This document shows, piece after piece, positions 38,240-58,834 of a stretch of DNA of 64,000 bases. The position numbers were made by a program, and so were the translations under genes. Origin of the DNA: Selaginella moellendorffii (lineage: Eukaryota > Plantae > Lycopodiophyta). The DNA is taken from positions 3,957,229 to 4,021,228 of the forward strand of contig NW_003314264.1 of the NCBI RefSeq assembly GCF_000143415.4, given 5' to 3'. The notes beneath the pieces are model-generated. The model was not told the origin of the DNA. It did not search any database and worked only from the letters and a program-made list of their open reading frames with translations. The first letter of the stretch is position 1; the number at the start of each line of letters is the position of its first letter.

Positions 38240-39505
38240 TCACTTGTGGAACTCCACTACTGATATGAAGTCTACAGTCACGGGAACTTTGACGCTCGAG
38301 AAGCCCGACGCCTTGGCGAGCTTCTCAAAATCCTCAAACGTCCTCTCCTTGCCACCCGGATTATAGACGAGCATCAAGAGATCGATGCTGAGAGCCACTC
38401 GAGCTCCAGCGCCCGTGTCCAGCACCGAGGGCAGAACGGAATCCACCACAATAACTTTTCCGTGCTCGGGGATGGACTTGTAGCAGTTCTTGAGCAGCGT
38501 GATGCAAGCCTCATCGCTCCAGTCGTGCAGGATCCACTGAGTCAACGCACGGTCAGCTCCAGTCCACGATAGTCAACGAGAGGGGGCGCTTGCTTACCTT
38601 CATGAAGATGGCGTCTCCTTGCGGGACGCTCACAAACATGTCCCCGCCAACGTGCTCCACACCTGGATATTCCCACATGGAAGTGAGAAATTCAATCGCT
38701 TCCGTGCTAGCTAGATTTGTTACCTGGAATTTGAGGAGCCTTGGCAACGACGTGAGGAAGATCGAAGTTGATCCCTTTGATCTCGGGATACTTCTTGAGA
38801 ATCACCGTCAGAGAAGTCCCGACTCCACCACCAACGTCGACTAGTGTCCCAATTCCCTTGAATCCGTGGTAGGCCTCCAGGATGGCGTTCATGTAGAGCT
38901 TAGAGTGATTGGACATGGCGGCGTGGAAGAGATTGTTGACCCTGGAATTCTCCTTTCCCAGCTCAAACTCGGTCTGCCCAAACGCCTTGGTGAAGGGCTC
39001 GCCGCCGTCAAGAACAGCTTCGTGGAGATACTGCCAGGTCTCCATGAACACCTAAATTCCCCCCAAAAAAAAACAGAGTGATACTCCGGATCAAAATGCG
39101 GATGGAAAGAAGAGAAATTCGAGGAGTTCCCACCTTGTCTTGATTCATGAGGACATGATGCGCCAGAGAGACCCCTCTCTCGTCCTTGATGAGATGCTTA
39201 CACATGGAAGTAAGCCCATACTTGCGCACGCCCCCTTCGTCCACCTCCTTGAAGATCTTGCGGCTGGCCAAGACTCGCATGATCCGGTCGAGGTAGATCG
39301 GCGACATGGGGCTGGAGCACTCGGGGATCTGTGACACGATCTCGGCGGCGGACAGAAGCCCGCCAGGCCCCGCCTTTTCGATCCGCTCCGCCACATCCAT
39401 CTCCACCGCTACTTTGAGCGCCATGGGCACCGAACACATGGTCGCGAGCTCCATTATCTGGAGGCGATCTTCATCCTCCACGATCACTCCCCCGGCAGAC
39501 CCCAT
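38240..39505 (-). CDS. COMT: Caffeic acid/caffeyl-alcohol O-methyltransferase (SmCOMT-like), 4 exons
   Basis: Dimerisation domain [19 protein letters not shown]|VFMETW, SAM motifs [28 protein letters not shown], catalytic MK|WILHDW, GGKERT. Confidence 0.95.
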
Positions 39506-40161
39506 ATCCTCGAATTCTTCGACCGATCGATAAAGATCTTTGCCAGAAGAGAGAGAGAGTAAGAGTGGAGAGAGAGCGAGAGAGCGAGATAGAGAGAGAG
39601 GGGGGATAGGGAAGATGATATAGGTATAGAGCAGTGCTTACGCGCTGTAGATTTCTAATTTAACCACCATGCCTACTCTTCCAAGAGCTTTATCTCTCAA
39701 GGACTCATAGCAAAAGAAGAACAGCGAAGTCTCGGATCCAGCAGGCAGCAACAATCAGCTCTAATGTTTTTGGGGCCCTTTTTTCTTCTTCTCTTGTGGC
39801 ACCCATGTCCAAAAGAAGTATCAACTTCAGAAGTTGGGAGGGACCCTTTGCTTGCGTTTTACTCGTTCAAACCGTGTTATGAAATTGTTACACGAGAAAG
39901 GGTAAAAAGTTGGCGGATTACTTACATGTGGCCATTTCCTATGCAACGTAAGCGTGATGTCGCAAGAAGCCACACGGACTCTGTAGTTGCCAAAGGGCGT
40001 CTGCTTTTAAATCTCCGCTTTCTCGTAGCTGATTCTCAGAGCTTCCCCAAAGCTCGCACTCTCTCCCCTCACTCTTTGTATCTCGACGGAGAGTCTTTCC
40101 CTGCGATCGACCAATTGAATCGACGCTGCTCACTCAAGTGGTATCACTCACTCAGTCAGTC
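39506..40161. promoter_or_regulatory. Shared bidirectional promoter of COMT and F5H; (GA)n microsatellite at ~39547-39600
   Basis: 656 bp between divergent ATGs; this matches the arrangement I recall being published for Selaginella SmCOMT/SmF5H. Confidence 0.8.
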
Positions 40162-41873
40162 ATGAATCTCTCCTCGATCATGGGCGAGTACACACAGCAT
40201 GACAATTTCACGGCCGTGGCCTCGCTCTCGCTCGTCCTCGCCGCCGCGATTGCGCTCCTCGCTGCCTTGTTCTCCCGGCTGAGGAACTCCAAGCGCCCGC
40301 CGCTGCCCCCATCGCCGCCCTCCAAGCTCATCACCGGCCACCTCCACCTCCTGGACCAGCTTCCCAATCAGTCTCTGTACAAGCTCGCCAAGATCTACGG
40401 CCCGCTCATTCAGCTCCGCCTGGGTGTGGTGCCGGTGGTGGTCGCGTCCACCGCGGAGATGGCCCGGGAGTTCCTCAAGGTGAACGACTCCGTGTGTGCG
40501 TCCCGGCCGAGGATGGCCGCCCAGAAGATTATCACGTACAATTTCACGGACATCGGGTGGGCAGCGTATGGTGCTCACTGGCGGCAGCTCCGTAAGATTT
40601 GCACGCTGGAGCTCTTCACACACCGGCGGATGCAGGAGACGGCGAAGGTTCGAGCCCGGGAGCTGGCGGACACCATGGCCGGCATTTACCGCGACCGGGA
40701 GACGAGCATCAACATGAACACCCGGATCTTCTCGCTCACCATGAACGTGATCAACCAGATGGTGATGCGCAAGAAGCCATTCTCCGGCTCCGATACCAAG
40801 GAGGCGCGGGAGTTTATCGACCTCATTAATGGAGTCTTCATGGTGTGGGGAGCGTTCAACATTGGAGATTACATTCCGGGACTTTCCATCTTTGACTTCC
40901 AGGGGTACATCGGCATGGCCAAGGTCCTCCACAAGAAGCTCGACCATCTCCTAGACAAGGTAATTGAGGAGCACATCCAGCGGAGGATGGCCAAGTCGGA
41001 CGAGCCGCCGGACTTCGTGGACGTGCTTCTCGCGCTCACGCTCGAGGACGGGAGCAAGGTCAGCCACAAGACGATCAAAGGCATAATTGTGGTAAGTGAT
41101 CCTTTCCCACTGAGTGGGTTCTAGTCAAAAGTGGGATCGATCATTCGCCCATGACGAAGAGAGATCAAAGACGAGAGGGGGTGGCGGGCGATCTCGAGAG
41201 ATATTTTATTTGATGTCTATCTCTTCTCTTTGTGCAGGACATGATAGCCGGAGGAACCGACACGGCAGCTGTTACCATCGAATGGGCCCTCTCCGAGCTC
41301 ATGCGAAAGCCACACATCCTCAAGAAGGCCCAGGAGGAGATGGACCGAGTCGTAGGGCGGGACAGGGTGGTGGACGAGTCCGACTTGCCAAACTTGCCAT
41401 ACCTCGAGTGTATCGTCAAGGAGGCACTCCGGCTCCATCCCTCGGTACCCATCCTCCGCCACGAGTCCATCGAAGACTGCGTGGTTGCCGGCTACCGGAT
41501 CCCCAAGGGAACGGGTATCATGATTAACGTTTGGGCGATTGGGAGAGACTCAGCAACCTGGGAGAACCCAATGGAGTTTGATCCGGACAGATTCATATCG
41601 GCTGGTAACACTTTGGACGTGCGGGGCAATCACTTTGATCTCATTCCCTTCGGTTCCGGGCGGAGGATGTGCCCAGGAATGCCGCTGGGCATCAGCATGC
41701 TGCAGATGAGCCTTGGCCGATTCATCCAGTGCTTCGACTGGGGGCTGCCACCCGAGATGAAATCAGCCGAGGAGATCGACATGACGGAGACCTTCGGGCT
41801 CACGGTTCCTCGCAAATATCCCTTGCATGCAGTGCCTATTCCGCGGCTGCCGGCCCATCTCTATCAAGCTTGA
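40162..41873 (+). CDS. F5H: CYP71-clan P450, Selaginella ferulate 5-hydroxylase (CYP788A1-like), 2 exons (intron 41092-41237)
   Basis: PPLPPSPP hinge, AYGAHWRQLRKICTLELF, DMIAGGTDTAA, KEALRLHP, FDPDRF, PFGSGRRMCPG; head-to-head with COMT. Exact CYP name is from recollection and context. Confidence 0.88.
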
Positions 41874-42416
41874 TCCAAACAAAAGGCGAAGTTCCAAACG
41901 AAGAGAAAGCGCAAAAAAAAAGAGAGATAACTCTCTCCATCCTCAAGAGTCGTATTTCAATTTGAGTAGTGTGTACATGTCGTGGTTTTAGAAAATGGAT
42001 GTGGAGCCAGGCAGTCCAAGGGATGTCGGGAGGTCCATCATCCATCAAGAAACACAGGGTGATAATAAATTTATTTTTATGCTTAAATCTATAGAATACG
42101 GTGCATTAGCCAGCACTGTCAAGTTATTTGGAATGAATAACAACCGACATGTTTAAGTGATGAAGCCGGTCCAAGTCCTCTCCTCACCGTCAAGTGGTTC
42201 ACATCTATAGGTGGCTTTTTCAACATGCATTCTGGCATGATCAAACGTGAGGCACAAAGATTTTTGGGAGTGAAGTTCTAAGGTGGCCATTTCCAAATTT
42301 TCAAAGATTAACTCTAATGGCCATAACTCTAGTTTGTTTTAAGTAAGAAATCGTTAGCTAACATATAATTTATTATTATTCAGAAAATCATATTTCTAAA
42401 TGATGGAGAAATGCAT

Positions 42417-42702
42417 TTGGTTTGCTTAAGCAGAGATCGTAGTGGATATACTTAGAATATGCTTGGTTATTCTAACATATTCTACCATCTAACGGATGTT
42501 ATTCATTTAGATTAATCTTGTATTTATAATTTATAAACATTCCTAAATACTTTCTAGTATATTCTTTTTATTCTACCATCTAATGGTTAATATGCAATAA
42601 GATTAATCTTGATTTATAAATTATAAACATGTTTATAATTATTGATCAATTGGATTATTTAAAAATACTAAATAAGTATGACACTACTATTAAGAAAACC
42701 AA
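42417..42702. mobile_element. MITE, same family as 34909-35463
   Basis: TTGGTTTGCTTAAG ... TTAAGAAAACCAA termini; internal tattctaccatctaac...gttattcatttagattaatcttgtatttataattta shared with the 34.9 kb copy. Confidence 0.72.
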
Positions 42703-45700
42703 AAGTTACTGCATGCAATGCACAACAAATTATTATTTTTTTAATTTTATTTTGTGTTTTTTGCAGTATATAATATATCTATAAATAACATTATGTGGTA
42801 TGTGTTTTTTGTTCTAGTATTATGATATTTAAGTGGTAGTAAAGGCTTTTATCTACAATTTATTGATAGTTTATGTTGATTATTAGGATATCACTTATTT
42901 AGGCTAAGTTTTTCTTCAGTTATTAGGTATTGCATTAGGATATCACCTAACTTGCTGTTTTTTTTATGTCAAACATTAAGATCTTCCTACACTATTGATT
43001 CTTTTTGTTAATTATTAAGATTTATGTTGTATTAAATTATTAAACTATTTATCACTATTGATTCTTTTTGTGAATTTTTATGTCACTTATTCTACTAATT
43101 TTCTTTTATATAATTCAATACTGTCTTCCAAAAAACATAAGACCAAGGGATTTAAATAGGCTGCCAATGTCTTTTATGGTCTCCCCCTCTGGTGTGCCAA
43201 CTATGATTTGTATTACCAATGATGAAATAAAAGTTAGAACCTAAGAGTTGGAGGTGTTTACAATATGTAAAATAATTATTAATGATGTGGTTCACATCTT
43301 ATACCTTATCAAAGCAAGAGGGGCAGAATTACAATTCTCATAGGATCTTTGGCTTGGTGTGATATCTTAACTCCACAATGCGTCAATGCTATCTTATTCA
43401 GCAACTTGTGAGAATCTTTATTGTTAGGCCTATCCTTTAGAGGATTGTTAGCTAATTTCTTTTTTGTATTGTATTATATCAAATCTGTTCTAAAGGCTTT
43501 TCAAATTAGCTTAATTTGCAATACCACATTTGAATGTTTATATTGTGGTAACAAATACTTGTTACCACCCATAAACCTTTTTTTTTTTCACATTGCGTGA
43601 ACCTAGGTGTGCCATAGAGCAAGCACTAGATGTAGTAGGGATGCCCACACATAAAGATGTGATTGCATAGATGAATAAAAAAAGTGCTCAAAGGCTATAA
43701 AGTAAGCAATCTCATCATTGCAATTAGTGTGGACCAAAATAAATTCCATCAACATTTGAAGAGCATAAGCTGGAAGGGAGTATATTCAATTAAGAGTGTA
43801 AATGGGGTAGAAGTAATTCTTTAGTAAATTCTGCCATAATGTGAGAATGTTATAATGTGGGGCCTCACATATGCTAATGGAGAGTTGCGGAGTAGGAAGC
43901 AGGATGTTGTAGAAAAATAGTTGTTGCATTAACTTACATTTGTCTCAAGAGCATGATTTAGAGGCATCTTGAACCGATAACATGTATACAATATCAAAAG
44001 CCTACATTGGCAATAAGTATTTGTGATTTTTTGATTCTTGCCTGATAACTCAGCATTGATTGTGGATAGCTTATTATAGGTTAAAGTTGTGAGGTCTATA
44101 TTTGCATGGAATCATTGACACTTGCATGTGTAATATTTGTAGGGACCCATTATATAGTGGACATATTTGTGTCAACAAACAAAAACTAATATATGAATAC
44201 TACTATACAACAATTTTAAAATACAGTTGTGGAAAGCTAATGTGTGGTGATTGGGTGGTAGAGTTCAATGAAATTGAATTTGATATAATCAATGTATAGA
44301 AGGGCAAAAGAGGTTTATGTGTTGATCATTCATCACAACTAAATACATTATGCAATAGACTATAGAGACTAATAAATTTATTTTTAGAGAATTAAACACT
44401 TTTGAAGGGAGATATAATGTAGAGTGACACAACCCATCAAAAGTTAAACTAATATCTAAATTGATTATATGATTTTTTAAGTCTTTAGTATGTCAAATTT
44501 TTTTTTGCATCTTTGAAGTACATTTTAATATGGTTCTATGTCTCATAGTTGAAGTGGCTCCTACAATAAATGAGCATATTGTGCAGGGCAATGCAAGGGC
44601 TAAGGAGGTTATTATAGTGCTGTATAGTTGTGGAGGTGATAAGGAATATTCTAAGCATATTTCATAGTATATAGTAAGAGTATATTCTAGAGTTTCGCCT
44701 TTCTTTATTCATTTTTGGCACATTATATAGGAAAGAGTGACTTTATAGTTTTCTTGCTCTGTAAATCTAAAAAATTGAGAGAAATAGAGGTAAAAAATTG
44801 GCAGTTTAGGTGATTTGATATATATATTTAATAAAAATTCTTGTGGGATATGGTTGCAAAGAAGGAGCTTCATTCAAGTAATTGTTTGGTCATCAAGATA
44901 TTTTGAAGTGATTTGAGGTTTTTTAGTATTTAGTGTGTTAATTTAAGATATTTTGCTTTTTCGCTTATGCTTACGTCTATAACAAAAGCTACACACTGAA
45001 AGCTAGAAATTTCAAGACAAAAATTCTTTGACATTTGAGATATTATCAAGAAGTCCACCCCATAATTATTTCAAAGAGCAACACAAAGTTTAAATGTTGG
45101 TGAAAGATCAGATGGAGTTGTATCAATGGGGTTATTATTTGACTTTTTATTTTTCCACCACTAGAAAAGATAAAAATCAATCTTTATAGTGTTACAATTC
45201 TACCAAAATTCTTAGATATAAACAAGGAGGAGCTACAGACATATTTAAATTTAGTAGAGTTATTATTGGAGATTTTGGATGTGACAAATGTTACCAAGAT
45301 TGTTAGGAGGATGTTTGGGCTTTATATGGAAGTGATCTGTTAACAGAGGTAATATTACACTATGTGGAGTTGTCGAAATAAAACTCTAGTAGCAAAACAA
45401 CAAGAGTTGCTAATCATACTAACGTGAAGCTTCACTTCTCAGTTAAGGATGGGTTTATTTACTATAAGCAAAAGAAATTATATCTTCCAACCAAGGATTT
45501 GTGACAGTTGTATTTGCATGAATATCATAATGTTCTAGCAATGGGACATAGCGGTAAATAAAAAACTCTTGCCTCGTTAAAAAAGATAGTTTAGTATAGA
45601 AGGTGAGGTAGTAAATTATGTCCATTCTTGTCTTATCTACTAGTAATATAAGTAAAGGATTAAGAATTAAGTTGGGAAGTTCTAGTACATTCTAGTACCA

Positions 45701-45870
45701 ATATGGCCATTTTAGAGTGTGATACTTAACTTTATCAGTTGTTTGTCAAAGTCTAAAGGTTATGACAGACAGTAATTATAAATCAATTGTCAAAAATTGC
45801 ATATTTCATCCCAATTGTGAAAATATAGAATGCTAAACAAGCAATAAAACTCTTTTTCCATAAGATAAGA

Positions 45871-46290
45871 TGTGAATTTAGACTTCTTAGGATGTCACCC
45901 AGCCCAGTATTATTCAAACCCAAGTATATTTTAACTTTAAATATCCCAAGACCCTTAATCAATTAGAAAAGAGGGTGAACTTACTTCAGTGCAAGTTCAC
46001 ACATTTGTGAACAAAAGTTGATTCTCTTAGCCAACCCATAGAGTTAGACCCAAAACCTCTTTAATACTAAATGTCTTTACAAATTCATACTTTGAGTTAA
46101 ACCCAAGACTTTTTTGATACTAAATGTCCCTGCAAATTCATGCCCTTGTGAACAGATGTTGATTCCCCTAGACAACCAATAGAGTTGGATCCAAGACCTC
46201 TTTCATACTAAATGTAAAATGTCTTTGAATTTAAACTTTCTGGGAGGTCAATACTTCAAACCCAAATACACTTAACCTTAAATATTTGTC
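45871..46290 (-). mobile_element. Old degenerate Cassandra-like TRIM
   Basis: gacttcttaggatgtcacccagcccagtattattcaaacccaag...aaatatcccaagacccttaa matches the LTR at 49660 onward; a second LTR start at ~46213 is preceded by decayed internal/PBS sequence. Confidence 0.7.
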
Positions 46291-49200
46291 TCTCCCACGT
46301 CACCATCTCCCACAGCTTCCCCTACTGTTCATCAAGTCTGAATCAGGAAAAGTTCCCTAAACTCAAATCGGGGTTCTGTTCCTGACTCTACGAAGTTTTC
46401 ACCCTCTTCTTTTCCCTCTCTTCCATCTTACATTGGACAGTATCTTCGTCTTATCATTCTATTCATTCGTACGCCTCCTCTTATCTCCACAATCACTATG
46501 AAAGAACTCCTTCATGAAGAACTTATTTTCCTTTTTGCTTTGTATGTTTCTCCTATCAATCTTCCTGAGAAGTATCATGATTTTAGGGATGTGTTTGACA
46601 AGAAAAAAGCTAGTGTATTGCCTATTCATCAACCTTACAACTGTCCCATTGATTTACAGGAAGGAGAGTCACCTTCGGAACCATTATCTGCTGCCCTTGA
46701 TCTCGGACCTATTGGAATGCTTCAGCGGTGCTCGCTTCTTCACGAAGATTGACCTCCATGGAGCATACAACCTGATCTGGATCGGGCCTGGTGATGAATG
46801 GAAGACTGCATTCTGAACCCGCTATGGCCACTTCGAGTACACTGTCATGCCATTTGTCTTGACAAATGCTCCAGCAGTTTTCTAACATATGGCAAACGAC
46901 GTCTTTCAGGAGTTTCTTGATCAAATGGTGATCGTTTACCTCGACGACATCCTCATCTACTCAATAACTTAGGAGGAGCATGATAAGCATGTGCGCAAAG
47001 TGCTAGCAAAGTTGCGGGAACACGGCCTATATGTGAAGCTTGAGAAATGTTCCTTTGATCAAGAGTATGTGGAGTTCCTTGGGTACATTGTCACTCTTGA
47101 GGGTATTACAATGGATCCTACCAAAGTCAAGACTATTCTCAAATGGGAGCCTCCACAATCAATGTCGGACGTTTAAGTTTTCCTTGGCTTCGCCAACTTT
47201 TACCGCAAATTCATTGATCACTACTCTGACATTCTCACACATCTCACTTGCAAGGATGTTCCCTTCTCTTGGTTTGTTGCTGCCCAGTAGGCCTTTGACA
47301 CACTCAAGGCAGCCTTCAGTTCTACTCTCGTCTTGATCCACGTTGATCCCTCACAACCTTTCTTCATCGAAGCAGATGCCTCCGACTTTGCCATCGGTGC
47401 TGTGCTGTCTCAACCCGGAGGGGATCAAGAATTTCATCTAGTCGCTTTCCATTCTTGGAAATTCTAGCTTGCAGAGATCAATTATTAAATCCACGACAAG
47501 GAGCTCCTTGCCATCGTGGACTCCTTTGGAGAGTGGCATCGTTTCTTGGAGGGGGCGAGCCATCAAACAACGGTCTGGACAGATCACAAAAATCTCGAGT
47601 ACTTTGCCACTTCCCGAGTTTTGAGCCATCATCAGGCAAGGTGGGCACAATTCCTGAGTTAGTTTGACTTTGTTATCAGGTACAGACCTGGAAAGCTTCA
47701 AGGCCTTCCTGATGCTCTTTCAAGGCACTCCTATCTCAATCTCAAGCCTGGTAATCTTGCCTTCGATTAACAGGATCAGGTTATCCTTGGTCCTGATCGG
47801 CGTCAAGTTATGGCAATTTCCCTGGCCCCTTAGGACTCCTCCTTGATGGATGTGATCAGAAACAATCTTCAATCTGACGACCTCGCCAGCGACATTTTCC
47901 CCCATCTTCAGGCTGGACACCCAATGAGTCCTGACTGCCGGCGATTTGACGAGTTCGAGTTCTTAGATGGCTTGTTGTACCGTGGGGAGCAGCTTTACGT
48001 TCCTGAAGGTGATGCTCGAAGGTTGATCCTGATGGCATGCCACAATAGCCCGACTGCTGGTCACTTTGGCATTGCAAAAACCTATGAGCTGGTTGCACGG
48101 GACTTTTGGTGGCCTCACATGGACAGCTACATCAAAGCTTTTGTTACCTCCTGTGACACTTGCACCTAGAATAAGGTACCTCACCATCTTCCTTTAGGTT
48201 TGCTTCGTTCCCTCCCGGTCCTTTTAGGTCCTTGGGAATTTATCTCCATGGATTTCTTGAGTGATCTTCCGAGTTCTGGAGGCTTCAACAACATTTTAGT
48301 CGTGGTGGATTGCTTCACAAAGATGGCGCACTTCTTGCCGTGTACCAAGGAGTTTTCGGGCAAGGACATGGCAAAACTGGTATTCAGGGAAATTTTCCAA
48401 CTTCATGGGATTCCTGCAGATGTGGTTTCAGATCGGGGACCTCAGTTCATCTCTCATTTCTGGAAACGATTCTTGCAGCTGCTTGAAGTGAAGGCCAACC
48501 TCTCTTCGGCGTATCATCCTTAAACTGATGGACAGTCCGAGTGAATGATTCAGATGTTGGAACAATTCCTGAGGTGCTTCATCAACTATCATCAGGATGA
48601 CTGGTTCGATATCCTTCCCCTTGTTGAGTTCTCCTATAACAATTTTGTTCACTCCTCCTTTCGAGTTTCCCCCTTCTTTGCAAACTCTGGCCAAAATCCT
48701 TGATTCAATCTCTCACTTCCTTCTCCATTCGAATCCTCTCGTTCAAATCCCCGCTCTAAGGCATTTGTCTCTAACCTCCAAGAAATCCATAACTCCATCT
48801 CCTTCCACCTCCATCGTGCTCAGGAATCTCACAAAACATTTGCCAATGTCCATCATCAGGATTGGCCCCCTTACAATATCAGGGATAAAGTCTAGCTCCT
48901 TAGGTGAAATATCTCCACTAGCAGGCCATATCCCAAACTCAATTTCAAACACCTCAATCCTTTCCCTATCACTGCCATCATTAAATCCTGTCACTTATTG
49001 CTTTGCAGTTCCCTCCTCATATCAAATTCACCCCGTTTTTCACTCCTCTCTCCTTAAGCCTTATATTCCTAGTCCTATTCCAAATTGGGTCATTCCTTCG
49101 CCTCCACCAGTGCAGCTCAAGGATGGGTTTGAGTAGAAAGTTCAGGACATCCTTGATTCCAAGATCTCACGGTCTAAACTCTACTATTTGGTAGACTGGA

Positions 49201-50421
49201 AGGGTTACGGACTTGAGGAATGCACTTGGGAACTTGCGAACAACTTGATTCATTCTCTTAACCTTATTCAGAACTTCCACTATTGCTATCCTTCTTGTCC
49301 CAGTCCTCATTCTTTTCATTCTCCATCTTCCGTCCCTCGCTGCCCATCTCATCCTCCTCTTCATTCTCATTCATGTCCTCGTTCCACTAGTTCTTGAGGA
49401 GGGGGTGCTGTCAGGAATCCCCCATTCTTGCCACATTCTTGACTCTCGCCGGATTCTTGACTTGCAAACCATATTCCTGACTCTCAAGACACTTCCTTAT
49501 TCCTGACTCTTGAGACACTTCCCTATTCCTGACTCTCTCTCTCTCTCTCTCTCTTGACGATTCATGAGTCTCAAACCACATTCCTAATTCACATTTCACA
49601 TTCATGAGCACCTCCTCGACCTCAGCTATATTTAGGCCGTCCTCGATCCAAGAGTGGTGTGTAAGCTCCTGAGTTTAGACTTCCCGGGAGGTCACCCAGC
49701 CCAGTACTATTCACACCCAAGGACGCTTAACCCCAAATATCCCAAGACCCTTAACCGTTTGGAAAAGGGGGTGCACTCTTGTTCATGGGCCCTTTCCCTC
49801 TATATTTGAACCCCTATGGATCGTCACTCGAGTCGTTCCCCCTATGGATCGTCACTCGAGTCGTTCCCTTTGGTTGCTTACAATCCAACACGCTTCCCTA
49901 CTAGTTCACACCCTCGTGAATGGAAGCTGAGAGCCGCAGCTCTCCCGAGAGCCCCGCTCTCTTGACACCCTACCCCTCGGGTCGAGCCCAGCGGGAGCAA
50001 ACTGGACCAACCAGATGTCAATCAACATGTGGTGCGATTCCCTTAGCCAACCAACAGAGTCGGACCTGAAACCCCTCTGATACCAAATTGTAAGCTCCTG
50101 AGTTTGGACTTCCCGGGAGGTCACCCAGCCCAGTACTATTCACACCTAAGGACGCTTAACCCCAAATATCCCAAGACCCTTAACCGTTTGGAAAAGGGGG
50201 TGCACTCTTGTTCATGGGCCTTTTCCCTCTATATTTGAACCCCTATAGATCGTCACTCGAGTCGTTCCCTTTGGTTGCTTACATGGTGGAGCTTCATCAA
50301 CTTATAGTATATATAGGTTAGCGTTGTTCCATTTCTCCACAATCTGAATCAACGCCAGTTTAAGGCCTCTTCCTTGTTTGAGGTAGCGCGCGCTTAGCTA
50401 GGATCTAGCATTGTCTTGACA
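46290..50421 (+). mobile_element. Second Ty3/gypsy chromovirus (family B, Tcn1/Tf2-like), 5'-truncated; 3' LTR 49409-50421 interrupted by a TRIM
   Basis: RT ([17 protein letters not shown]), RNase H (HDKELLAIV, TDHKNLEYF), integrase (AGHFGIAKT, SCDTC, SDRGPQF), chromodomain (YYLVDWKGYGLEECTWE), PPT gaggagggggtgc, LTR TGTCAGG...CTTGACA; many premature stops. Confidence 0.85.
49660..50283 (-). mobile_element. Cassandra-like TRIM with 5S-rRNA-derived segment in each LTR
   Basis: LTRs 49660-49882 and 50089-50283 with TGTAAGC...GCTTACA termini; TSD TGGTG at 49655-49659 and 50284-50288; minus-strand PBS TGGTATCAGAG at 50075-50085; 206-bp non-coding interior; LTR core GGTTAAGCGTCCTT(A/G)GGTGTGAATAGTACTGGGCTGGGTGACCTCCCGGGAAGTC. 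Confidence 0.93.
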
Positions 50422-50569
50422 ATAATCAAAAATAAGTTTTGTAATAAATCTTGCAAATCAATAAAATAAATTAAAAATTTCTTCTTCTATGTCAGTTTTG
50501 GCAAGTTGATTTTGGCACTTCAGTGCATGGGTTCAATCCATAACTATGGGAATAACTATTATAAACATT

Positions 50570-51308
50570 TAACTTTTGGGGTTTATTTGTGCTTAAGGGA
50601 GTTGGGCCTTTGGCTCTCTCTATATCTCTACAAGCAGAGTGTGAGACACAAAATCCCTAGGCCCCAAAGTGGAGCCGAAAGGGCACCATGTGGTAATGGT
50701 TGAAGCGAAAGCCAAACGAACGTAACACGTTTGGACTAAAAGCTCCAACTTGAAAGGTCGAGAGCAAGAGTGGAACTCCCAACAAAGTGCTCGAGGAATG
50801 AGCACGAAGTGAGCAATAAGCGAGGCTCTAAAAAAGGGACCCAAAAGGACCAAGACATGACATGTGGAAGTGTTCGAGATGGACTCGAGATGGAGTCCGA
50901 GATGGACCAAGACGGAGTTCAAGATGGAGTCCGAGATGGACCGAGACGAAGTCCGAGATGGAGTCCGAGATGGATTGAGACGGAGTCCGAGATGGAGTCC
51001 GAGATGGAGTCCAAGATGGACCGAGACAGAGTCTGAGATGGAGTCTGAGATGGACCGAGACAGAGTCCGAGATGGATCCGAGATGGAGTCCGAGATGGAC
51101 CCGAGATGGAGTCCGAGATGGACCCGAGATGGAGTCCGAGATGGACCCAAAATGGAGTCCGAGATGGAGTCTGAGATGGACTGAGATAGAGTCCGAGATG
51201 GAGTCTGAGATGGACCCGAGATGGAATCCGAGATGGAATCCGAGATGGAGTCCGAGAAGGAATCCGAGATGGAGTCCGAGAAGGAATCCGAGATGGAGTC
51301 CGAGGTCA

Positions 51309-51340
<32 letters not shown>

Positions 51341-52440
51341 GCCGAGGCCGAGTCCGAGTCTGAGGCCGAGCCTGAGTCCAAGTCCGAGTCCGAGTCTGAG
51401 GCCGAGCCCGAGTCTGAGGCCAAGCCCGAGTCCGAGTTCGAGTCTGAGAGGGTGAAAGCCCAAAGCGTTCGTCTCTTAGACCCTGGGGGGTTTGGTGAGT
51501 TCCAAAAGTATAGTAAGGGGGAGAACTACAGTGGAGCCAATTTGGCCAAGAAAGGCTAGTTTGGCCTAGAAAGGCTGTACCCAGTGTTAGGTGATGAGTT
51601 GCCCACTGGGAAGTCCAAGACTAGAGTGAACACGGACCGGCAAGCGGGGTAGCTTGGTGAAGTGTTCAAGAGCCGGCTCTAGTTCCCCTGGGAGATCGAC
51701 TAGCCGATGCTCTCTGTCCAAGTGTGGGTGGCACTATCTACTTGGATACCTGGTGTGGCTTAACGGAACCTCGCTCTAAGCCCATGGCTAGAGCACCTAA
51801 AGGCGGAAGGCGGGGAGAGTACCCATGAGGCCCACATAGGGCCACAGTGTTCCAAAATGTTATCCCAAAGTCCCAGATTGTGGAAAGGAAGAGGAGTAGC
51901 CCTCAGGTGTGGTGACTAAGGACATAGTCACATAGTGAGGAAGTTCTAGAGGACAATGGGACTTAGTGGTCAGGCCCATAGGCCTTGATCTAATGGTAGT
52001 GTTGGTGAATACGGCCAAGGACAGAAAGGGACTTGATGGGGACCAGAAAGGAGATATTGGGGAAGGTTATTCCCCATGTCTGCGGGCATCCTAAGGATGC
52101 TAAGGAGTGAATCTAGGATGCCACTCATGGACGGATGGCCCAGTCTTGGAAAGATGGGATTGCAATGCAGGTGGTGTTAGACCACCGATGTGACCAAGGT
52201 GATTGGGCATGGCCTAGCGTAACAGGCTGGTATGTTGGTGGTGTTTTGGGGTGTCGGTCATGGGACCAAACACGTGGAACACTTGGACTAAGTGCAAAGG
52301 TTGAGTGGTATGGATGCCATTCTCGGGGCTAGCAAGCCCTAAGTCTTGAGTGGAACTTATGGAGGTTGTGAATGAGACTCCTCCAAGTGGTCAAAGGTGT
52401 GGTTAAGTGACTAAAGTAAAATGGAAAAAATTAGTCACTT
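50570..52440. mobile_element. GC-richer insertion, probably a solo LTR related to family A; boundaries approximate
   Basis: Interrupts the old family-A 3' region; 51450-51520 (gggtgaaagcccaaagcgt...gttccaaaagtatagtaagg) resembles the LTR-A promoter core at ~33905-33970. Confidence 0.5.
50872..51449. repeat. Hexamer-based minisatellite (GAGATG/GAGTCC/GAGACC/GAGGCC units)
   Basis: About 580 bp of GAGNNN units, mostly the 12-mer GAGATGGAGTCC, grading into CCGAGA and GCCGAG repeats. Confidence 0.92.
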
Positions 52441-53041
52441 ACATAGAGCTATATCATTCCTTTATGATCTAACTAGTAAGGATGATTAATTTTATTAGTC
52501 ATTTCTTTGTCGGTGATGGCTAGAGGGTGTTTAAGTGTTAACATCTTTTGATATAGAAGTTTTGCCACTCATTTAAGTTGGTATATTTCTCACAAAATGT
52601 GTCTTCAATTAGCTTTTAGAGCTATTTTTTTTATAGTTTATTAAACTAGGTATACATTGATGAGGACGTTGATCTTCCAAAGAAGGGGAGTATGTCATAA
52701 ATATGACTTTGAGTATCAACAAATATTTGTTAGCTAATCCTTTTAAACATTTTCTCTTTGCTACTATAACAATAAGAGATTGGTATTATTAGTTCCTTTT
52801 GTTGGCCCTTCTTGGGCTAGTGGAGTTAATTGGACATCTTGAGTATATTTAAACTAGACAAGTATAAAGACATAATTCCTACATGCTATTAACTAATTAT
52901 ACTTAACCCAATAAAGATTCATGTCTCCTTATGTCTTGCATTGGTTAGCAATAAAAACCCTTATATATGAAGCCTAGTCCTTCAATATTATTATATGATA
53001 TTTTACTGTATCTACTAAACACCTTTGCTATCATGCCCCAT

Positions 53042-53660
53042 TGTAACACACTTGATTTTTGAGCTAAACTTCAAGCCCATTATGCTACAAAATAAATATC
53101 TAATATATACTTAATATCCTCTATGAGCATTAACTCTCTATAGCCAACTCTTAGATACAAAACAATATTAAACAGTATTTGGCAAAATTTCAATATGCCA
53201 GTGGCCCAAGCAAAGAGGTGCATACCCCACTAGCTAAAGCAACATGGAACTTGGGCTTAAGCCTAAACTAGATGCCAAATAAAAAATAAAATAGCCCAAT
53301 GGGGGCTAAACTAATACCTCATGCATGCTATCCTTACTTTACATTTAGAACCCTTTATAGCTCCCCCCCCATATGAAACACACACTTTGGAAGTCTTAAG
53401 AGTTCCTAACACTCTCTACATTTTGTAAATATGCCTCTCAGGTAGATTTAGATGTTTATCATAAATAGCATATAGATCCGAAACGAGACCAACATATAAA
53501 ATATAATAGTAAGGGTGTCTGACGGAAATGATGACTAAGCTCAATATCATAAGGGTTCCTAACACTAACAATGCAAGTAAACAAATAAATTTCTCTAATC
53601 AAACCAAGTATCCTTAGTTAATAACATTTAGAAATTCCATTATGCTCATTTGGTTAAGTA
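53042..53660 (-). mobile_element. Inverted degenerate solo LTR of family A
   Basis: tgtaacacacttgatttttgagctaaacttcaagccc is the decayed reverse complement of the LTR-A end; further blocks match the reverse complement of ~27110-27350 and ~33920-34075. Confidence 0.72.
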
Positions 53661-54887: not shown

Positions 54888-55501
54888 ATGGCGAGCAATG
54901 CAGCGGCGAGAGCGCAGAAGGAGGCGGATTCGCACCTCAAAGCTCTGATGGCATGGCCAGAGAATCAGAAATGTGCTGACTGTGGAGCCTCCAAGCCTCG
55001 GTTTGCATCCATCACGCTGGCTGTCTTTCTGTGCAATCGCTGCTACGGGATCCATCGCGGCGTCGGTGCTCACATCACGCGCACCAAATGTGTGGGGTTG
55101 GATCGATGGACCCCCGAGGAAGTGCATCGCATGAAATGCATTGGGAATGCGGTCGCAGCGGCATATTGGGAGCGTAAGTGTGAGAACCTCACTCACTTTA
55201 TCTTTCTTTTTATCCTGGACTGATTTGGCGTTCTTTTAATTTTGTAGAGAGACTGCCTCAAGGAATCCAGCGGCCATCGCCGGAATCGCCGGACTCGGAG
55301 GTGGAGAGATGGATCAGAGACAAGTACGAGAAGAGGCTCTTCTGCCCTCCGGATTTGCCTCCTCCGGAAGCTCCAAAGTTTGCGATCGAGGTACTTCAAA
55401 GAGTTTTCTTTGCTGATACTTTGCTAAAAGGCCTTTGACAGGAAACGGGAGCGTCAGTACGTTCTTCAACTTTTCAAGCCGACTGGAAACCATTTGGATA
55501 G
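54888..55501 (+). CDS. Small ArfGAP-domain protein (~160 aa, 3 exons)
   Basis: ENQKCADCGASKPRFAS...FLCNRCYGIHRGVGAHITRTKCVGLDRW (CxxC-16-CxxC with arginine finger), WIRDKYEKR; the third exon ends DWKPFG*. Confidence 0.85.
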
Positions 55502-56515
55502 ATGGATACGTTTGGAATCCAAGTGCCTGGAACTTCTGTTACTTGATAGCGATTTCTGGCTTGCGTGCCGCAGCCGGAATAGTTAGATCCAAGAGATCCA
55601 AGGGAGTTCTGGTCTTCTACAACTCCACAAACTAAGTACACAAGCTTTTTTTTACCTTCTGGCAAGCTGGCGGGGCATGTTTTCTTAACTTGTCCCTTAG
55701 ATGTCACTTTTCACCAAAAGAGTTTTGGCAAGATCCGCACCGGGATAGCGATTGATCGCTCCCGCTAACTATCCAATTTCTGTTCATGATGTGGCTCTCT
55801 CCGAGCAAGATGTGTCGCTTTTACAAAAGCTGACGTGAGTCCTCTCTGTCGCCAGCGAGATCCGTGCTCGCTTTGCCAGCCACACACCAATTACATCTCG
55901 AGAAGTTACGCGAGAACATTTGTTTCAAGAATGGCTGACGGACTCGTCGTTGGATTGATCCCCAGGAAGACAAAGGGAGGCCACGTCGGAAAGTCGGGCA
56001 AAGACAGGAGATCATCAATCATCAACTTGTTTCGTGTAGGTTTGATCAACTTCCGGTCCGCAGGTCAACGCAAATTAAACCTTCCCACATGGCCAGACCT
56101 AGAAGCATTGCTCATCAATGAGGTCAGCGTGGAATCATTAACGGGTCCACCCTGGTCAACGTATGGTCAATTGAGGTCAACACTCTGGCACGCTTCTAAC
56201 ACTCGCACCAACCACAATAGATCCCCCTGGAATCTTGGTGGATCCCCCTCCTTTACAGCGGTGTGGGATGGTTTGGCTTTGCGCCGGGGCGAGTCTTGTG
56301 TGAACCACGTGGATTTTGTTTTGAGCAATAACGCCATTTCTTTGTACTTCCAACTTGGGTGACGGAAATGTACAGGGCGACTTGATCGCCAATCCTATCA
56401 ATCAAGCTGCTATCAATCTAGAGCCTTTACTCTCCTATAAGTTGAGAAGCTTATAAATGGTGGTGGTGGTGGTAGTGTTGTGAAATGTATACTGTTGAGC
56501 TGATCCTCCCGATCA

Positions 56516-57639
56516 TCAATAGACGAGAGCCGAGAGTTTCTTGTTGGAGAGGATCTGCTCATTGCTGCCAAGGAAACGAGCGCGAAAGTCGAGTCAGAGA
56601 AGATGGAAGTGCCAGTTTGATTGATAGATAACCAAACCTTTTCTTGACATTGCTGCCAGTGACAATGTCTCCAAAGCATATGTATCTCCCCACCGCGTTT
56701 GGCTTCTCCAGAGCTACGAGATGCGCAGACGCAACTTCTTCAACGTGAGCGTACGCCAGCACTTCGTCACGGTGGAGTTCCCTCACTCCTGGTCCATTTT
56801 GACAAAAGATTATCGCTCGTTCAAACTTGTAAGTTCTTGGAGAGTTACCTTGGATCGAGGGATCCCGGGAAACAACCGTGGCCGGATTTAAGACCACCAT
56901 ATCGAGGCCTTTGTCGAGGGCGAGAGCCCAGGCAGCGCGCTCGGCCAACGTTTTCGAGAGAGGCGACCATAGCTGAGCTCAAGAACAAGACAAGGAATAG
57001 TGTCAGGGAGACAGTGTGATGGACACACACGCAAATCTTACCTTGTTTTCTCTGCAAAAATCGAGATTTGTCCAGCACTTCTCGTCCAGAGAAGTTTCCT
57101 CCTGCGTGTAGACAATGGTGGAGAGACACGAGGTAAGAACCAAGCGCCTCACGGTCTCGGAGTTGGCGCATGCCTCCACGACATTGAGAACTCCCTTGAT
57201 TTCGTACTCGATCATATCGGCCTGGAAGAAAAAGAAGAAAGAATCTTTCTAGCTCGCAAGAAAAACATTAAACGAGAGTGTTTCTTTGGCTCACCGGATA
57301 GTCTCGCATTCCATTCATGTCGTGTGGCGCTGGCGAGTGGATCACTCCCGAGCAGCCCCGGATCGTCTTTGCGAGGCTCTTGTAATTGAGAACGTCGACC
57401 GAGACGAGGTGGAGCCTTTGCGCGGCTCCTGGCAAAGATTGGAGCTGGGAAAGCTCCTCTGCGAGGGATCACAGCTCGTTAGGAAGATCACATCATGATC
57501 CAAAGAACCTACCTGAGCTTAGATGGACTCCACAGCGAACAGAGTATCCTCGCTCCAGCAGCAGCTTCACAATCGAAGAGCCCATCAATTCCCAGCTCCC
57601 GGTGACACACACGAGATCGACAGTGTCCTCAGCACCCAT
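56516..57639 (-). CDS. Cinnamoyl-CoA reductase-like SDR (SNL6/CCR-like subgroup), catalytic Tyr replaced
   Basis: VCVTGSWELMG..LLERGYSVR, EIKGVLNVVEACA..VRRLVLTSCLS, DEKCWTNLDFCRENK|LWSPLSKTLAERAAWALA, MVVLNPATV, GRYICF, last exon SNEQILSNKKLSALVY*. Confidence 0.85.
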
Positions 57640-58037
57640 TGTAAGACCAGAGAAATAAAAACAAGAAAAGAAACAAGGGAGAGAGAGAGACGAGAGATCA
57701 AAGAGTGGCGGCGATGAGTGGAGGAATTGGGGGGCGCGGGGCGGGATTTTATAAGCAGGAGCAACGAGAGGCCACGAAACCCAAGTCGGGTAAAAAGGCG
57801 AAACGTGGAGGGAGTCAATCTATGGCGGGGTTGACTCGCGGCGACCGGCAACGACCGCGAGAAGATGGCTGGCTATGGCGCGCCGAGAGAAAGAGAGAAT
57901 GACATTAAATACGTACAGGTGGGGAGACAAGATCGTGGCCGTTCGTTGCGGGCGGTAAATGCGACATAAGCAACGGTGATGGTGCTAATACTATGGGTTT
58001 TATTCAAATGATTTTGATTTGATTGATTAATCATAGA

Positions 58038-58834
58038 CTAGCACTCAGTAGCGATGCTCTTGGCCACAGATTCTACAGTGGAGGGTGTCATGCAGTTTTC
58101 TCCCAAAATCCACTCGATAATGGAAGTGGAAACGTTCTCGTTGTTGACAATGAATCTGGAAGGAGCTTTTGATCCTTCCTCGCGAACGAAAACCTGTGAG
58201 AATCATACATTGATTTGGAGAAAAATCTTTCCTGAGAGGAATTTTTGAGATCTTGCCTCAACGTGAGAGCTTGACGATGGCCAGGAGTAGACGATGGTGG
58301 AGTTTGGCTCCAGTTTCTTGCTCTGGAAGAACTCGCAGAGATTTGCGAGAGCTATCTCCTCGTCCTCCTCGTATTTGTCATCGTAGGCTAGCCTGTCGCG
58401 AATGCTAGTCTCGATTGTGGATGCGTACTGGCTCCCAAGTTGCCCCTTGACGAGCAAGATCTTGATGAGCTTAGAAACCGGAGCTGCGAATGTTTTCTAA
58501 GATTTTATTTTTTCTTCCCGAGCGAAAAGAATTGAATCACTCACCTTGTATGAGCTGCTGGAAAAACTCACTGCCATCCTTGAGGAGCTCGGATACCGGG
58601 AGGCACTTGAAGGACTGGAGATGATCCTTGACTTCCGGAGCAAAGTAAACGCCGATCTTGGTGAAGATGACGTGAATTGTCTCGATGGTCATGTCCGTGA
58701 TGCCTGCGAAAAAAGCAATGGTCCGCAATCACAGCGAGCAGCAAACAGAGATTTTTACCATGCCCCAGGAGAATGAGTGTCTCCGACGAGGAGGGAGATT
58801 GAATGGATTGCGCAAAAGTGGGATCCATCTCCAT
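58038..58834 (-). CDS. CHIL: Chalcone isomerase-like protein (type IV CHI fold, CHIL/EFP), 4 exons
   Basis: Spliced: MEMDPTFAQSI...LILLGH|GITDMTIETIHVIFTKIGVY...FFQQLIQ|APVSKLIKILLVK...GSQYASTIETSIRDRLAYDDKYEEDEEIALANLCEFFQSK...|VFVREEG...VNNENV...EWILG...TPSTVESVAKSI. Carries the CHIL signatures GITD, RDRLAxxDKYEE and FFQSK. Confidence 0.9.

What the first reader, a model, noticed from the sequence alone, without database searches (positions are those of the whole stretch)
38240..58834. Possible extended phenylpropanoid gene neighbourhood: COMT-F5H plus tandem CCR-like and CHIL 'helper' genes
Seen: COMT(-)/F5H(+) at 38.2-41.9 kb, then CCR-like (56516-57639) and CHIL (58038-58834) in tandem on the minus strand. 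The spacer is an AT-rich/TE block plus one small ArfGAP. Known: SmF5H and SmCOMT make syringyl monolignols independently of angiosperms, CHIL proteins are non-catalytic partners of chalcone synthase, and SNL6-type CCR-likes are linked to lignin/defence. Inference: without the nested TEs these four genes from three phenylpropanoid branches would lie much closer together. They may be a co-regulated cluster or metabolon of two enzymes plus two non-catalytic scaffold or rectifier proteins, possibly also making 3',5'-methoxylated flavonoids. I know the two-gene pair as described but not this wider linkage.
Basis: partly seen in the sequence, partly recalled or inferred. Interest (0 to 1): 0.85.

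Follow-up and report, generated by a model that had tools for sequence, protein, structure and literature searches.

The report
Known lignin gene pair plus neighbours

Summary
The window is Selaginella moellendorffii scaffold GL377568.1.

- **Known pair:** COMT (38240-39505, minus) and F5H/CYP788A1 (40162-41873, plus) sit head to head with 656 bp between start codons. This is the published SmCOMT-SmF5H syringyl-lignin pair.
- **Spacer:** 14.6 kb of AT-rich and transposon DNA follows, then an expressed small ArfGAP gene.
- **Tandem pair:** a 264-aa CCR/DFR-family gene (56516-57639, minus) and the CHIL gene (58038-58834, minus). RNA contigs from four studies show both spliced.

The other haplotype (GL377652.1) keeps the gene order. 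The scan had already noted this same neighbourhood there (s1-385219). Its spacer is 12.3 kb with different insertions.

No test I could run supported a four-gene functional unit:
- No CCR-like gene lies within 10 kb of CHIL in Marchantia or Physcomitrium.
- The promoters share no motifs above a control.
- The major expressed allele differs between CCR-like and CHIL.

Random placement gives a post hoc probability of 0.2-3%. Co-expression levels and synteny in other Selaginella species could not be tested.

The CCR-like protein has lost the catalytic Ser and Tyr and the glycine-rich NADPH loop. It is still well represented in RNA and under purifying selection.

Verdict: a known two-gene cluster plus probably coincidental neighbours.

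The parts
38240..39505 (-). SmCOMT-type O-methyltransferase gene. Four exons, in-frame pieces about 39131-39505, 38722-39048, 38598-38660 and 38243-38536. 353 codons.
   Evidence: Pfam Dimerisation plus Methyltransf_2 across the four pieces. A 353-aa gene is called at the same place on the other haplotype. dN/dS between haplotypes is 0.03. [quoted passage not shown] Identity as SmCOMT is inferred from adjacency to CYP788A1.
39506..40161 (.). 656-bp divergent intergenic region between the COMT and F5H start codons. Presumed shared bidirectional promoter.
   Evidence: It has no AC-element match. It shares no specific k-mers with the CCR-like or CHIL upstream regions beyond low-complexity runs. 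Promoter function is inferred.
40162..41873 (+). SmF5H (CYP788A1) gene. Two exons, about 40162-41091 and 41238-41873. 521 codons.
   Evidence: Pfam p450. Exon 1 is 99% identical to P0001. Cluster member P0140 on the 4.34-Mb scaffold is named CYP788A1. tblastn of P0001 gives the exon map. CYP788A1 is the bifunctional meta-hydroxylase for S-lignin (PMC8426635). dN/dS is 0.055.
41874..46253 (.). AT-rich spacer (about 30% GC), mostly shared with the other haplotype at 83-89% identity. No long ORFs.
   Evidence: Composition. Haplotype alignment.
46254..53412 (.). Haplotype-specific insertion block: degenerate Ty3/gypsy fragment (46.5-49.1 kb), TRIM (49660-50269) and a 12-bp-unit minisatellite (50852-51239).
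   Evidence: This 7.2-kb block corresponds to only 1.8 kb in GL377652.1. SH3_Tf2-1 hit. 181-bp direct repeats at 98% identity and the minisatellite family.
54888..55700 (+). Small ArfGAP gene (158-aa product in the annotation). Expressed, and unrelated to phenylpropanoid metabolism.
   Evidence: CxxC...CxxC zinc-finger motif at 54972-55058. ORFs. Pfam ArfGap on the called gene. RNA contigs lie at 54915-55663. The 3' end is approximate.
56516..57639 (-). CCR/DFR-family SDR-like gene. Six exons: 57513-57639, 57294-57458, 57042-57220, 56848-56972, 56638-56787 and 56516-56564. 264 aa. Predicted non-catalytic. The transcript spans about 56333-57871.
   Evidence: All five introns, each with GT..AG ends on the minus strand, appear in RNA contigs of four studies. 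A 264-aa product with Epimerase and 3Beta_HSD is called. Exons match solved CCR, DFR and CAD2 structures. In those alignments LWSPLSK stands in place of LWYVVSK / WYCYGK (Tyr to Ser), LTSC in place of FTSS (Ser128 to Cys), and TGSWELMGS in place of TGAGGFIAS. dN/dS is 0.12, binomial p = 2e-4.
58038..58834 (-). SmCHIL (type IV chalcone isomerase-like) gene. Four exons: 58758-58834, 58545-58702, 58256-58483 and 58038-58192. 205 aa. The transcript spans about 57998-58951.
   Evidence: Pfam Chalcone. Best solved-structure matches are CHIL proteins and the CHI/CHIL ancestor, with true CHI only at E about 1. P0081, SELMODRAFT_227414, is named 'probable chalcone-flavonone isomerase 3'. L002 matches the window at 100% identity. 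Introns are seen in RNA contigs. SmCHIL was used in CHS-interaction work (PMC7018950).

Best explanation
The region holds the already described two-gene syringyl-lignin cluster of Selaginella moellendorffii. SmCOMT and SmF5H/CYP788A1 are transcribed divergently from a 656-bp shared intergenic region.

Three genes further on lies a tight tandem of two other genes. They are reached only after 12-15 kb of haplotype-variable AT-rich and transposon DNA and an expressed ArfGAP gene. One is the single CHIL gene, whose product binds chalcone synthase and rectifies its product profile. The other is a 264-aa CCR/DFR-family protein that has lost the residues needed for SDR catalysis.

The four-gene proximity is most likely coincidental synteny in a gene-dense genome rich in phenylpropanoid-family genes. 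It is probably not a co-regulated cluster or metabolon.

Shown: gene identities, splicing, transcription, the arrangement on both haplotypes, and the loss of catalytic motifs. Inferred: absence of functional coupling.
For: - **Identities:**
- **Pair already known:** PMC8416159 and PMC8426635.
- **Intervening gene:** ArfGAP is called and expressed between the two pairs.
- **Variable spacer:** it is 14.6 kb here and 12.3 kb on GL377652.1, with different insertions.
- **CHIL neighbours elsewhere:** in Marchantia (L003), Physcomitrium (L005) and contig L008, no SDR gene is called within 10 kb and tblastn with the CCR-like exons finds nothing.
- **Diphasiastrum:** the nearest Diphasiastrum P450 relative of F5H has no OMT within 10 kb.
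- **Promoters:** AC elements occur at the chance rate in the window and none lies in the promoters. Shared promoter k-mers are only low-complexity runs, and the ArfGAP control upstream region shares as many.
- **Allele use:** in all four RNA runs the CCR-like contigs match this haplotype, with the other allele at about 22-33% by contig depth. The CHIL contigs carry the other haplotype's variants.
- **Base rate:** other windows of this genome were also flagged for OMT, CCR-like and P450 neighbourhoods. These are unchecked notes, but they suggest a high base rate.
Against: - Under uniform placement, two more phenylpropanoid-family genes this close to the pair has a nominal probability of only 0.2-3%.
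- Flavonoids (amentoflavone, naringenin) make up about 14% of aromatic units in a Selaginella kraussiana lignin fraction, and the authors say amentoflavone signals are also visible in published S. moellendorffii lignin spectra (PMC8528957). A link between flavonoid flux and lignification is therefore biologically plausible.
- Co-expression levels were not measurable here. The runs are kept as contigs, and read laying was limited to one call of at most 6,000 letters on this genome.
- Synteny in other Selaginella species or Isoetes was not tested.
- The bryophyte comparisons are very distant.
Confidence: 0.75

Rival explanations
1. Only the CCR-like and CHIL tandem is a functional unit. Two non-catalytic helper proteins, one CHI-fold and one SDR-fold, would act together in flavonoid or phenylpropanoid metabolism, for example by binding chalcone synthase or a CoA-ester intermediate. 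The COMT-F5H pair would be unrelated to them.
For: - The two genes lie on the same strand. The CHIL transcript ends near 57998 and the CCR-like 5' UTR reaches 57871, so they are about 130 bp apart.
- Both are among the best-covered transcripts of the stretch in four studies.
- The CCR-like protein has lost its catalytic residues but is under purifying selection, dN/dS 0.12, p = 2e-4.
- CHIL is an established non-catalytic partner protein (PMC7018950).
Against: - The adjacency is absent in Marchantia and Physcomitrium.
- The dominant expressed allele differs between the two genes in all four runs.
- The ratio of contig depths varies about five-fold between runs, though depth from contigs is a poor measure.
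- Tight spacing is normal in this genome: eight genes are called in 14 kb of L002.
Confidence: 0.12
2. One reading: all four genes form an extended, co-regulated phenylpropanoid cluster or metabolon. It would couple S-lignin meta-hydroxylation and methylation with flavonoid flux, and might also make 3',5'-methoxylated flavones.
For: - Nominal chance probability of 0.2-3%.
- The arrangement is kept on both haplotypes, though that is expected for alleles.
- Flavonoids occur in Selaginella lignin fractions.
- CYP788A1's sequential 3- and 5-hydroxylation resembles that of the grass tricin enzyme A3'H/C5'H (PMC8426635).
Against: - The genes belong to different pathways, and one of them probably has no enzyme activity.
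- An unrelated expressed gene and 12-15 kb of variable transposon-rich DNA lie between the two pairs.
- The promoters share no motifs.
- Allele use is discordant even within the tandem.
- No conservation was found where it could be tested.
- The tricin papers I read cite it for Lycopodium, not Selaginella.
Confidence: 0.07
3. The CCR-like gene is a decaying pseudogene that happens to be transcribed, so the tandem has no functional meaning.
For: - Ser, Tyr, the glycine-rich loop and, by manual extension of the alignment, the R-X5-K and H-X-X-K motifs are lost.
- The stretch between the 'NP' motif and the following conserved block is about 13 residues shorter than in petunia CCR.
- The C-terminus is truncated to 264 aa, against about 320-340 aa in CCRs.
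Against: - The reading frame is open in both haplotypes with the same length.
- All five introns are correctly spliced in four studies.
- There are 10 synonymous against 4 non-synonymous differences between haplotypes, p = 2e-4 for constraint.
Confidence: 0.06

Closest known systems
SmF5H (CYP788A1)-SmCOMT two-gene syringyl-lignin cluster of Selaginella moellendorffii (Weng et al. 2008, 2011, as cited in PMC8416159)
   Same: It is the same locus. A CYP788A1 P450 and an adjacent 353-aa plant O-methyltransferase lie head to head on both haplotypes.
   Different: Nothing differs for the pair itself. The papers I could read describe only a two-gene cluster and do not mention the CCR-like, CHIL or ArfGAP neighbours. 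I could not read Weng et al. 2011.
Plant biosynthetic gene clusters in the usual sense: three or more non-homologous, co-expressed genes of one pathway (for example avenacin, thalianol, noscapine). Definition from my own knowledge.
   Same: Non-homologous genes of specialised-metabolism families lie within about 20 kb.
   Different: - The genes belong to different branches (monolignol and flavonoid entry).
- One is an auxiliary protein and one is probably catalytically dead.
- An unrelated gene and variable transposon DNA intervene.
- Co-expression is not shown.
CHIL (type IV CHI-fold) proteins, rectifiers of chalcone synthase (PMC7018950; solved structures 4dok, 8dlc, 8dld, 9kah)
   Same: The window's 205-aa protein matches solved CHIL proteins far better than catalytic CHI, and the SmCHIL gene of this species was used in that work.
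   Different: No link of CHIL to lignin enzymes is reported in the papers I read. The two alleles here differ at 6 residues.
CCR-like proteins of the CCR/DFR SDR family, including rice SNL6 (PMC2940737; overview in PMC12693918)
   Same: Sequence similarity to CCR, DFR and CAD2 runs across all exons. It lacks the NWYCY signature and the H-X-X-K substrate-binding motif, as CCR-like proteins do.
   Different: CCR-like proteins are described as keeping the Ser-Tyr-Lys triad and the G-X-X-G-X-X-A/G NADPH motif (PMC12693918). This protein has Cys and Ser in place of the Ser and Tyr, has GSWELMG in place of the glycine motif, and is shorter at 264 aa. Membership of the SNL6 clade was not tested.

Membership tests
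SmF5H-SmCOMT gene cluster | The P450 is CYP788A1 | tested here: met
   Exon 1 is 99% identical to P0001. P0140, on the same 4.34-Mb scaffold, is named CYP788A1 by UniRef. tblastn of P0001 covers both exons at 98.6-99.4% identity.
SmF5H-SmCOMT gene cluster | A plant-type O-methyltransferase lies directly next to the P450 | tested here: met
   Pfam Dimerisation plus Methyltransf_2, 353 codons, 656 bp from the F5H start codon on the opposite strand. That this OMT is the published SmCOMT rests on the review's statement. No sequence comparison with the published protein was possible.
Plant biosynthetic gene cluster (four-gene version) | Three or more non-homologous genes of the same pathway | tested here: not met
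   COMT and F5H act in S-monolignol synthesis. CHIL acts with chalcone synthase. The CCR-like protein lacks its catalytic residues, and no pathway is known for it.
Plant biosynthetic gene cluster (four-gene version) | Co-expression of the members | not testable with these tools
   The runs are held as contigs, so they give no expression levels, and only one read-laying run was available. Indirect signs point against co-regulation: discordant major alleles and no shared promoter motifs.
Plant biosynthetic gene cluster (four-gene version) | Contiguity without unrelated genes, or linkage kept in related species | tested here: inconclusive
   An expressed ArfGAP gene and 12-15 kb of variable spacer intervene. 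The linkage is absent near CHIL in two bryophytes. No other Selaginella or Isoetes genome could be reached.
CHIL (type IV CHI-fold) | Closer in sequence to CHIL than to catalytic CHI or FAP | tested here: met
   Exon 3 hits CHIL chains and the CHI/CHIL ancestor at E 1e-11 to 3e-14. Exon 2 hits them at E 1e-9 to 1e-4 and hits CHI 4doi only at E 0.98. NCBI names it 'probable chalcone-flavonone isomerase 3'.
CHIL (type IV CHI-fold) | Binds and rectifies chalcone synthase | not tested
   PMC7018950 lists S. moellendorffii among the CHIL and CHS sources it tested. Nothing was tested here.
Genuine cinnamoyl-CoA reductase | Ser-Tyr-Lys triad, G-X-X-G-X-X-A/G loop, and the NWYCY-type and H-X-X-K motifs | tested here: not met
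   Exon alignments to 4r1s, 4r1u, 2c29 and 4qtz show Ser128 to Cys, Tyr to Ser, Lys kept, and TGSWELMGS in place of TGAGGFIAS. The H-X-X-K region falls in a stretch about 13 residues shorter than in petunia CCR (with the intron; manual reading).
SNL6-type CCR-like clade | Groups phylogenetically with rice SNL6 and its orthologues | not tested
   The 129-aa ORF piece found nothing in its length range. The Atlas look-up gave only 'Epimerase family, Streptophyta'.

The most novel reading that the evidence does not exclude
The 264-aa CCR/DFR-fold protein next to CHIL would be a new kind of non-catalytic auxiliary protein of phenylpropanoid metabolism. It would be an SDR-fold counterpart of CHIL that binds a CoA-ester, an aldehyde or a partner enzyme rather than reducing anything. 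Together with CHIL it would form a two-gene helper module, and the module's position beside the S-lignin pair would reflect coordinated supply of flavonoids and syringyl units to Selaginella lignin.
Probability: 0.08. Interest if true: 0.7.

Novelty: already known. Interest (0 to 1): 0.27.

Why it matters
If the wider linkage were functional, it would be the first plant gene cluster to combine enzymes with dedicated non-catalytic helper proteins. It would also tie flavonoid entry to syringyl-lignin synthesis in a lineage that invented S-lignin on its own.

My tests give no support for that, so the region is best read as the known SmCOMT-SmF5H pair in an ordinary gene-dense neighbourhood.

The part worth following is narrower. 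A well-transcribed, selectively constrained CCR-family protein has lost its catalytic Ser and Tyr and its NADPH loop. It is a candidate pseudoenzyme of unknown role.

Tried and rejected
1. **AC-type MYB elements (ACCWAMC).** There are 24 matches in the window against 24.2 expected, and none in the COMT-F5H, CCR-like or CHIL upstream regions. This was uninformative.
2. **Shared 7-9-mers between the promoters.** Only CT/GA and A-rich runs are shared, and the ArfGAP control upstream region shares as many with the COMT-F5H region.
3. **Homologue search with the 129-aa CCR-like ORF piece.** It found no hit in the 71-225 aa range, so the SNL6 question stays open.
4. **ESM Atlas look-up of the same piece.** It returned only generic Epimerase-family plant clusters.
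5. **Expression-atlas supplement of bioRxiv 10.1101/744326.** Searching for the JGI protein numbers of F5H and CHIL found nothing. I do not know the PACid identifiers, so co-expression clusters could not be read.
6. **Papers not held.** Weng et al. 2011 (PMC3226203) is not held. The id I recalled for the Selaginella genome paper (PMC3166216) is not held either, and it may be wrong.
7. **Exact-protein look-ups.** P0082 (Diphasiastrum CHIL) and P0125 returned no locus.
8. **Depth from Logan contigs.** This is not a valid expression measure, so the five-fold variation in the CCR-like to CHIL depth ratio is mentioned only as a weak hint.
9. **Is the window a different species?** I considered this because L001 is only 94% identical, and rejected it. 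L002 from GL377568.1 matches the window at 100%, and GL377652.1 is the alternative haplotype.

Full report
**What is in the sequence**

The window is a plant sequence with short introns. Locus L002, from Selaginella moellendorffii scaffold GL377568.1 (assembly GCA_000143415.2), matches window 48038-64000 at 100% identity. Locus L001, from scaffold GL377652.1, matches at about 94% with large insertions and deletions. The window is therefore one haplotype of the reference assembly, and GL377652.1 is the other.

Pfam scans of ORF pieces and the annotated gene calls give this gene order:

| Position (kb) | Strand | Gene or element |
|---|---|---|
| 2.9-3.7 | + | ACT-domain gene |
| 5.9-7.5 | - | Protein kinase |
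| 12.6-14.5 | + | CYP72-clan-like P450 |
| 17.4-21.1 | - | GYF-domain gene |
| 21.9-25 | + | CCT/TCP-1 chaperonin |
| 27.0-34.3 | + | Full-length Ty3/gypsy element |
| 38.2-39.5 | - | COMT |
| 40.2-41.9 | + | F5H |
| 41.9-54.9 | . | Gene-free spacer |
| 54.9-55.7 | + | Small ArfGAP |
| 56.5-57.6 | - | CCR-like |
| 58.0-58.8 | - | CHIL |
| 59.1-60.7 | + | GT29 glycosyltransferase |
| from 61.5 | + | SMP/C2 gene |

**The COMT-F5H pair**

F5H exon 1 is 99% identical to P0001. P0140, a member of the same 90% cluster that lies on the window's own scaffold, is named CYP788A1.

CYP788A1 is the bifunctional phenylpropanoid meta-hydroxylase needed for syringyl lignin in this species (PMC8426635). [quoted passage not shown]

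The adjacent methyltransferase has 353 codons in four exons. It lies head to head with F5H, with 656 bp between the start codons. Between haplotypes both genes are strongly constrained, with dN/dS of 0.03 and 0.055. This part of the finding is already known.

**The CCR-like and CHIL tandem**

RNA-derived contigs from four independent studies were laid on 54600-60500. They show all five CCR-like introns: 56565-56637, 56788-56847, 56973-57041, 57221-57293 and 57459-57512. They also show the three CHIL introns: 58193-58255, 58484-58544 and 58703-58757. All have GT..AG ends on the minus strand.

The resulting products are 264 aa and 205 aa, the same lengths as the annotated genes. The CHIL transcript ends near 57998 and the CCR-like 5' UTR reaches 57871. 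They are separate transcripts about 130 bp apart.

*CHIL.* Its exons match solved CHIL proteins and the reconstructed CHI/CHIL ancestor, and match true CHI only at E about 1. The protein is P0081, SELMODRAFT_227414. Work showing that CHIL binds and rectifies chalcone synthase used the CHIL gene of this species (PMC7018950).

*The CCR-like protein.* Every exon aligns with solved CCR, DFR, ANR and Medicago CAD2 structures, but the functional motifs are gone:

| Motif | Reference enzymes | This protein |
|---|---|---|
| Catalytic Tyr | LWYVVSK / WYCYGK | LWSPLSK (Tyr to Ser) |
| Catalytic Ser | FTSS (Ser128 of Vitis DFR) | LTSC (Ser to Cys) |
| Dinucleotide-binding loop | TGAGGFIAS | TGSWELMGS |

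Extending these alignments by hand suggests three further losses:
- The R-X5-K NADP motif is absent.
- The H-X-X-K substrate-binding motif falls in a stretch about 13 residues shorter than in petunia CCR.
- The C-terminus stops soon after the 'SNKKL' motif.

CCR-like proteins are usually described as keeping the triad and the glycine motif (PMC12693918), so this one is unusually degenerate.

It is not a dead gene, though. The frame is open and the same length on both haplotypes. Splicing is correct in four studies. The haplotypes differ by 10 synonymous and only 4 non-synonymous changes, giving dN/dS 0.12 and binomial p = 2e-4. The label 'SNL6-type' was not tested.

**The spacer**

I rebuilt the other haplotype from L001 and L007. 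It has the same gene order, and COMT to CHIL spans 18,232 bp there against 20,595 bp here. This agrees with an earlier first-stage note on that scaffold (s1-385219).

The F5H to CCR-like spacer is 12.3 kb there and 14.6 kb here:
- Window 46.25-53.41 kb corresponds to only 1.8 kb on the other haplotype. It holds a gypsy fragment, a TRIM with 181-bp direct repeats and a 12-bp-unit minisatellite.
- The other haplotype has its own 3.8-kb insert.
- About 7.4 kb is shared, including the AT-rich 42-46 kb stretch and the ArfGAP gene.

Transposon fill is real. Removing it would still leave an unrelated, expressed gene between the two pairs.

**Tests of a functional four-gene unit**

1. *Conservation.*
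   - CHIL in Marchantia polymorpha and in Physcomitrium patens has no SDR gene called within 10 kb.
   - tblastn with the CCR-like exons finds nothing in those loci or in contig L008.
   - The nearest Diphasiastrum relative of F5H has no methyltransferase within 10 kb.
   - These species are distant, and no other Selaginella genome could be reached.
2. *Regulatory sequence.*
   - AC-type MYB elements occur at the chance rate, and none lies in the relevant promoters.
   - Shared k-mers between promoters are low-complexity runs, and a control promoter shares as many.
3. *Allele use.*
   - In all four runs the CCR-like contigs match this haplotype. The other allele reaches about 22-33% by contig depth at 57559 and 57575, in the three runs where its contig was kept (X1, X5, X15); in X7 it is absent.
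   - The CHIL contigs carry the other haplotype's variants at 58635, 58403, 58155 and 58093.
   - Contigs drop minor variants, so this is weak evidence. It does point to separate cis-regulation even for the two adjacent genes.
4. *Chance.*
   - With 200-800 phenylpropanoid-family genes placed uniformly in 106 Mb, two or more further members within 17 kb of the pair has P = 0.002-0.028. The genome size and family numbers are my own estimates.
   - The figure is post hoc and depends on how widely the families are drawn.
   - First-stage notes flag several other OMT, CCR-like and P450 neighbourhoods in this genome, which suggests a high base rate.

The nominal chance figure is low. Flavonoids (amentoflavone, naringenin) make up about 14% of aromatic units in a Selaginella kraussiana lignin fraction. 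The authors also see amentoflavone signals in published S. moellendorffii lignin spectra (PMC8528957). CYP788A1's sequential 3- and 5-hydroxylation has been compared with that of the grass tricin hydroxylase (PMC8426635). These points make a lignin-flavonoid link conceivable, but they are not evidence for this locus.

**Limits**

- The joined CCR-like and COMT proteins were not searched, clustered or folded.
- Expression levels could not be measured, because the runs are held as contigs and one read-laying run of at most 6,000 letters could not cover both pairs.

**Verdict**

The core is the known SmCOMT-SmF5H cluster. The wider four-gene unit is unsupported and probably coincidental (confidence 0.75). 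The degenerate but constrained CCR-family protein next to CHIL is the one new detail that deserves a bench test.

Noticed in passing
window 26953-34259: A full-length Ty3/gypsy chromovirus-type LTR retrotransposon lies between the CCT gene and COMT. It has gag-protease, RT, RNase H and integrase-chromodomain ORFs. Its LTRs, about 0.9 kb, are 96-98% identical. It lies inside an 11-kb stretch (25.2-36.2 kb) that is absent from the other haplotype, so the insertion is young.
   Followed up: partly
window 56516-57639: The CCR-like protein lacks the SDR catalytic Ser and Tyr and the glycine-rich NADPH loop, and is only 264 aa. Even so, it is well covered by RNA contigs in four studies and shows dN/dS 0.12 between haplotypes. 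It is a candidate pseudoenzyme.
   Followed up: partly
window 58038-58951 compared with 56333-57871: RNA contigs of all four studies carry the other haplotype's CHIL allele, including a TCTA insertion behind 58898 in the 5' region. The neighbouring CCR-like contigs mainly carry this haplotype's allele. This may be discordant allele-specific expression in genes about 130 bp apart.
   Followed up: partly
window 58038-58834: The two CHIL alleles differ by 6 amino acids against 3 synonymous changes (dN/dS 0.56, not significantly different from neutral). That is far less constrained than COMT, F5H or the CCR-like gene over the same divergence.
   Followed up: partly
window 12572-14522: There is a second cytochrome P450 gene on the plus strand, with an N-terminal pattern I recognise as CYP72-clan. 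It lies 24 kb upstream of COMT and has no evident link to phenylpropanoids.
   Followed up: no
window 49660-50269; L001 16082-16251: A TRIM element has 181-bp terminal direct repeats at 98% identity. A 170-bp match to its repeat lies at a different place and in the opposite orientation in the other haplotype's spacer.
   Followed up: partly
window 50852-51239: A minisatellite with units of about 12 bp (CGAGATGGAGTC-like) produces long spurious low-complexity ORFs on both strands at 50.6-51.5 kb.
   Followed up: no
L009 (Diphasiastrum complanatum CM055093.1); P0008 and P0010: Two P450 genes that are close by locus-tag number (O6H91_02G035100 and O6H91_02G034900) are the nearest lycophyte relatives of SmF5H found, at 34-38% identity over exon 1. 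No close orthologue outside S. moellendorffii appeared in the search.
   Followed up: partly
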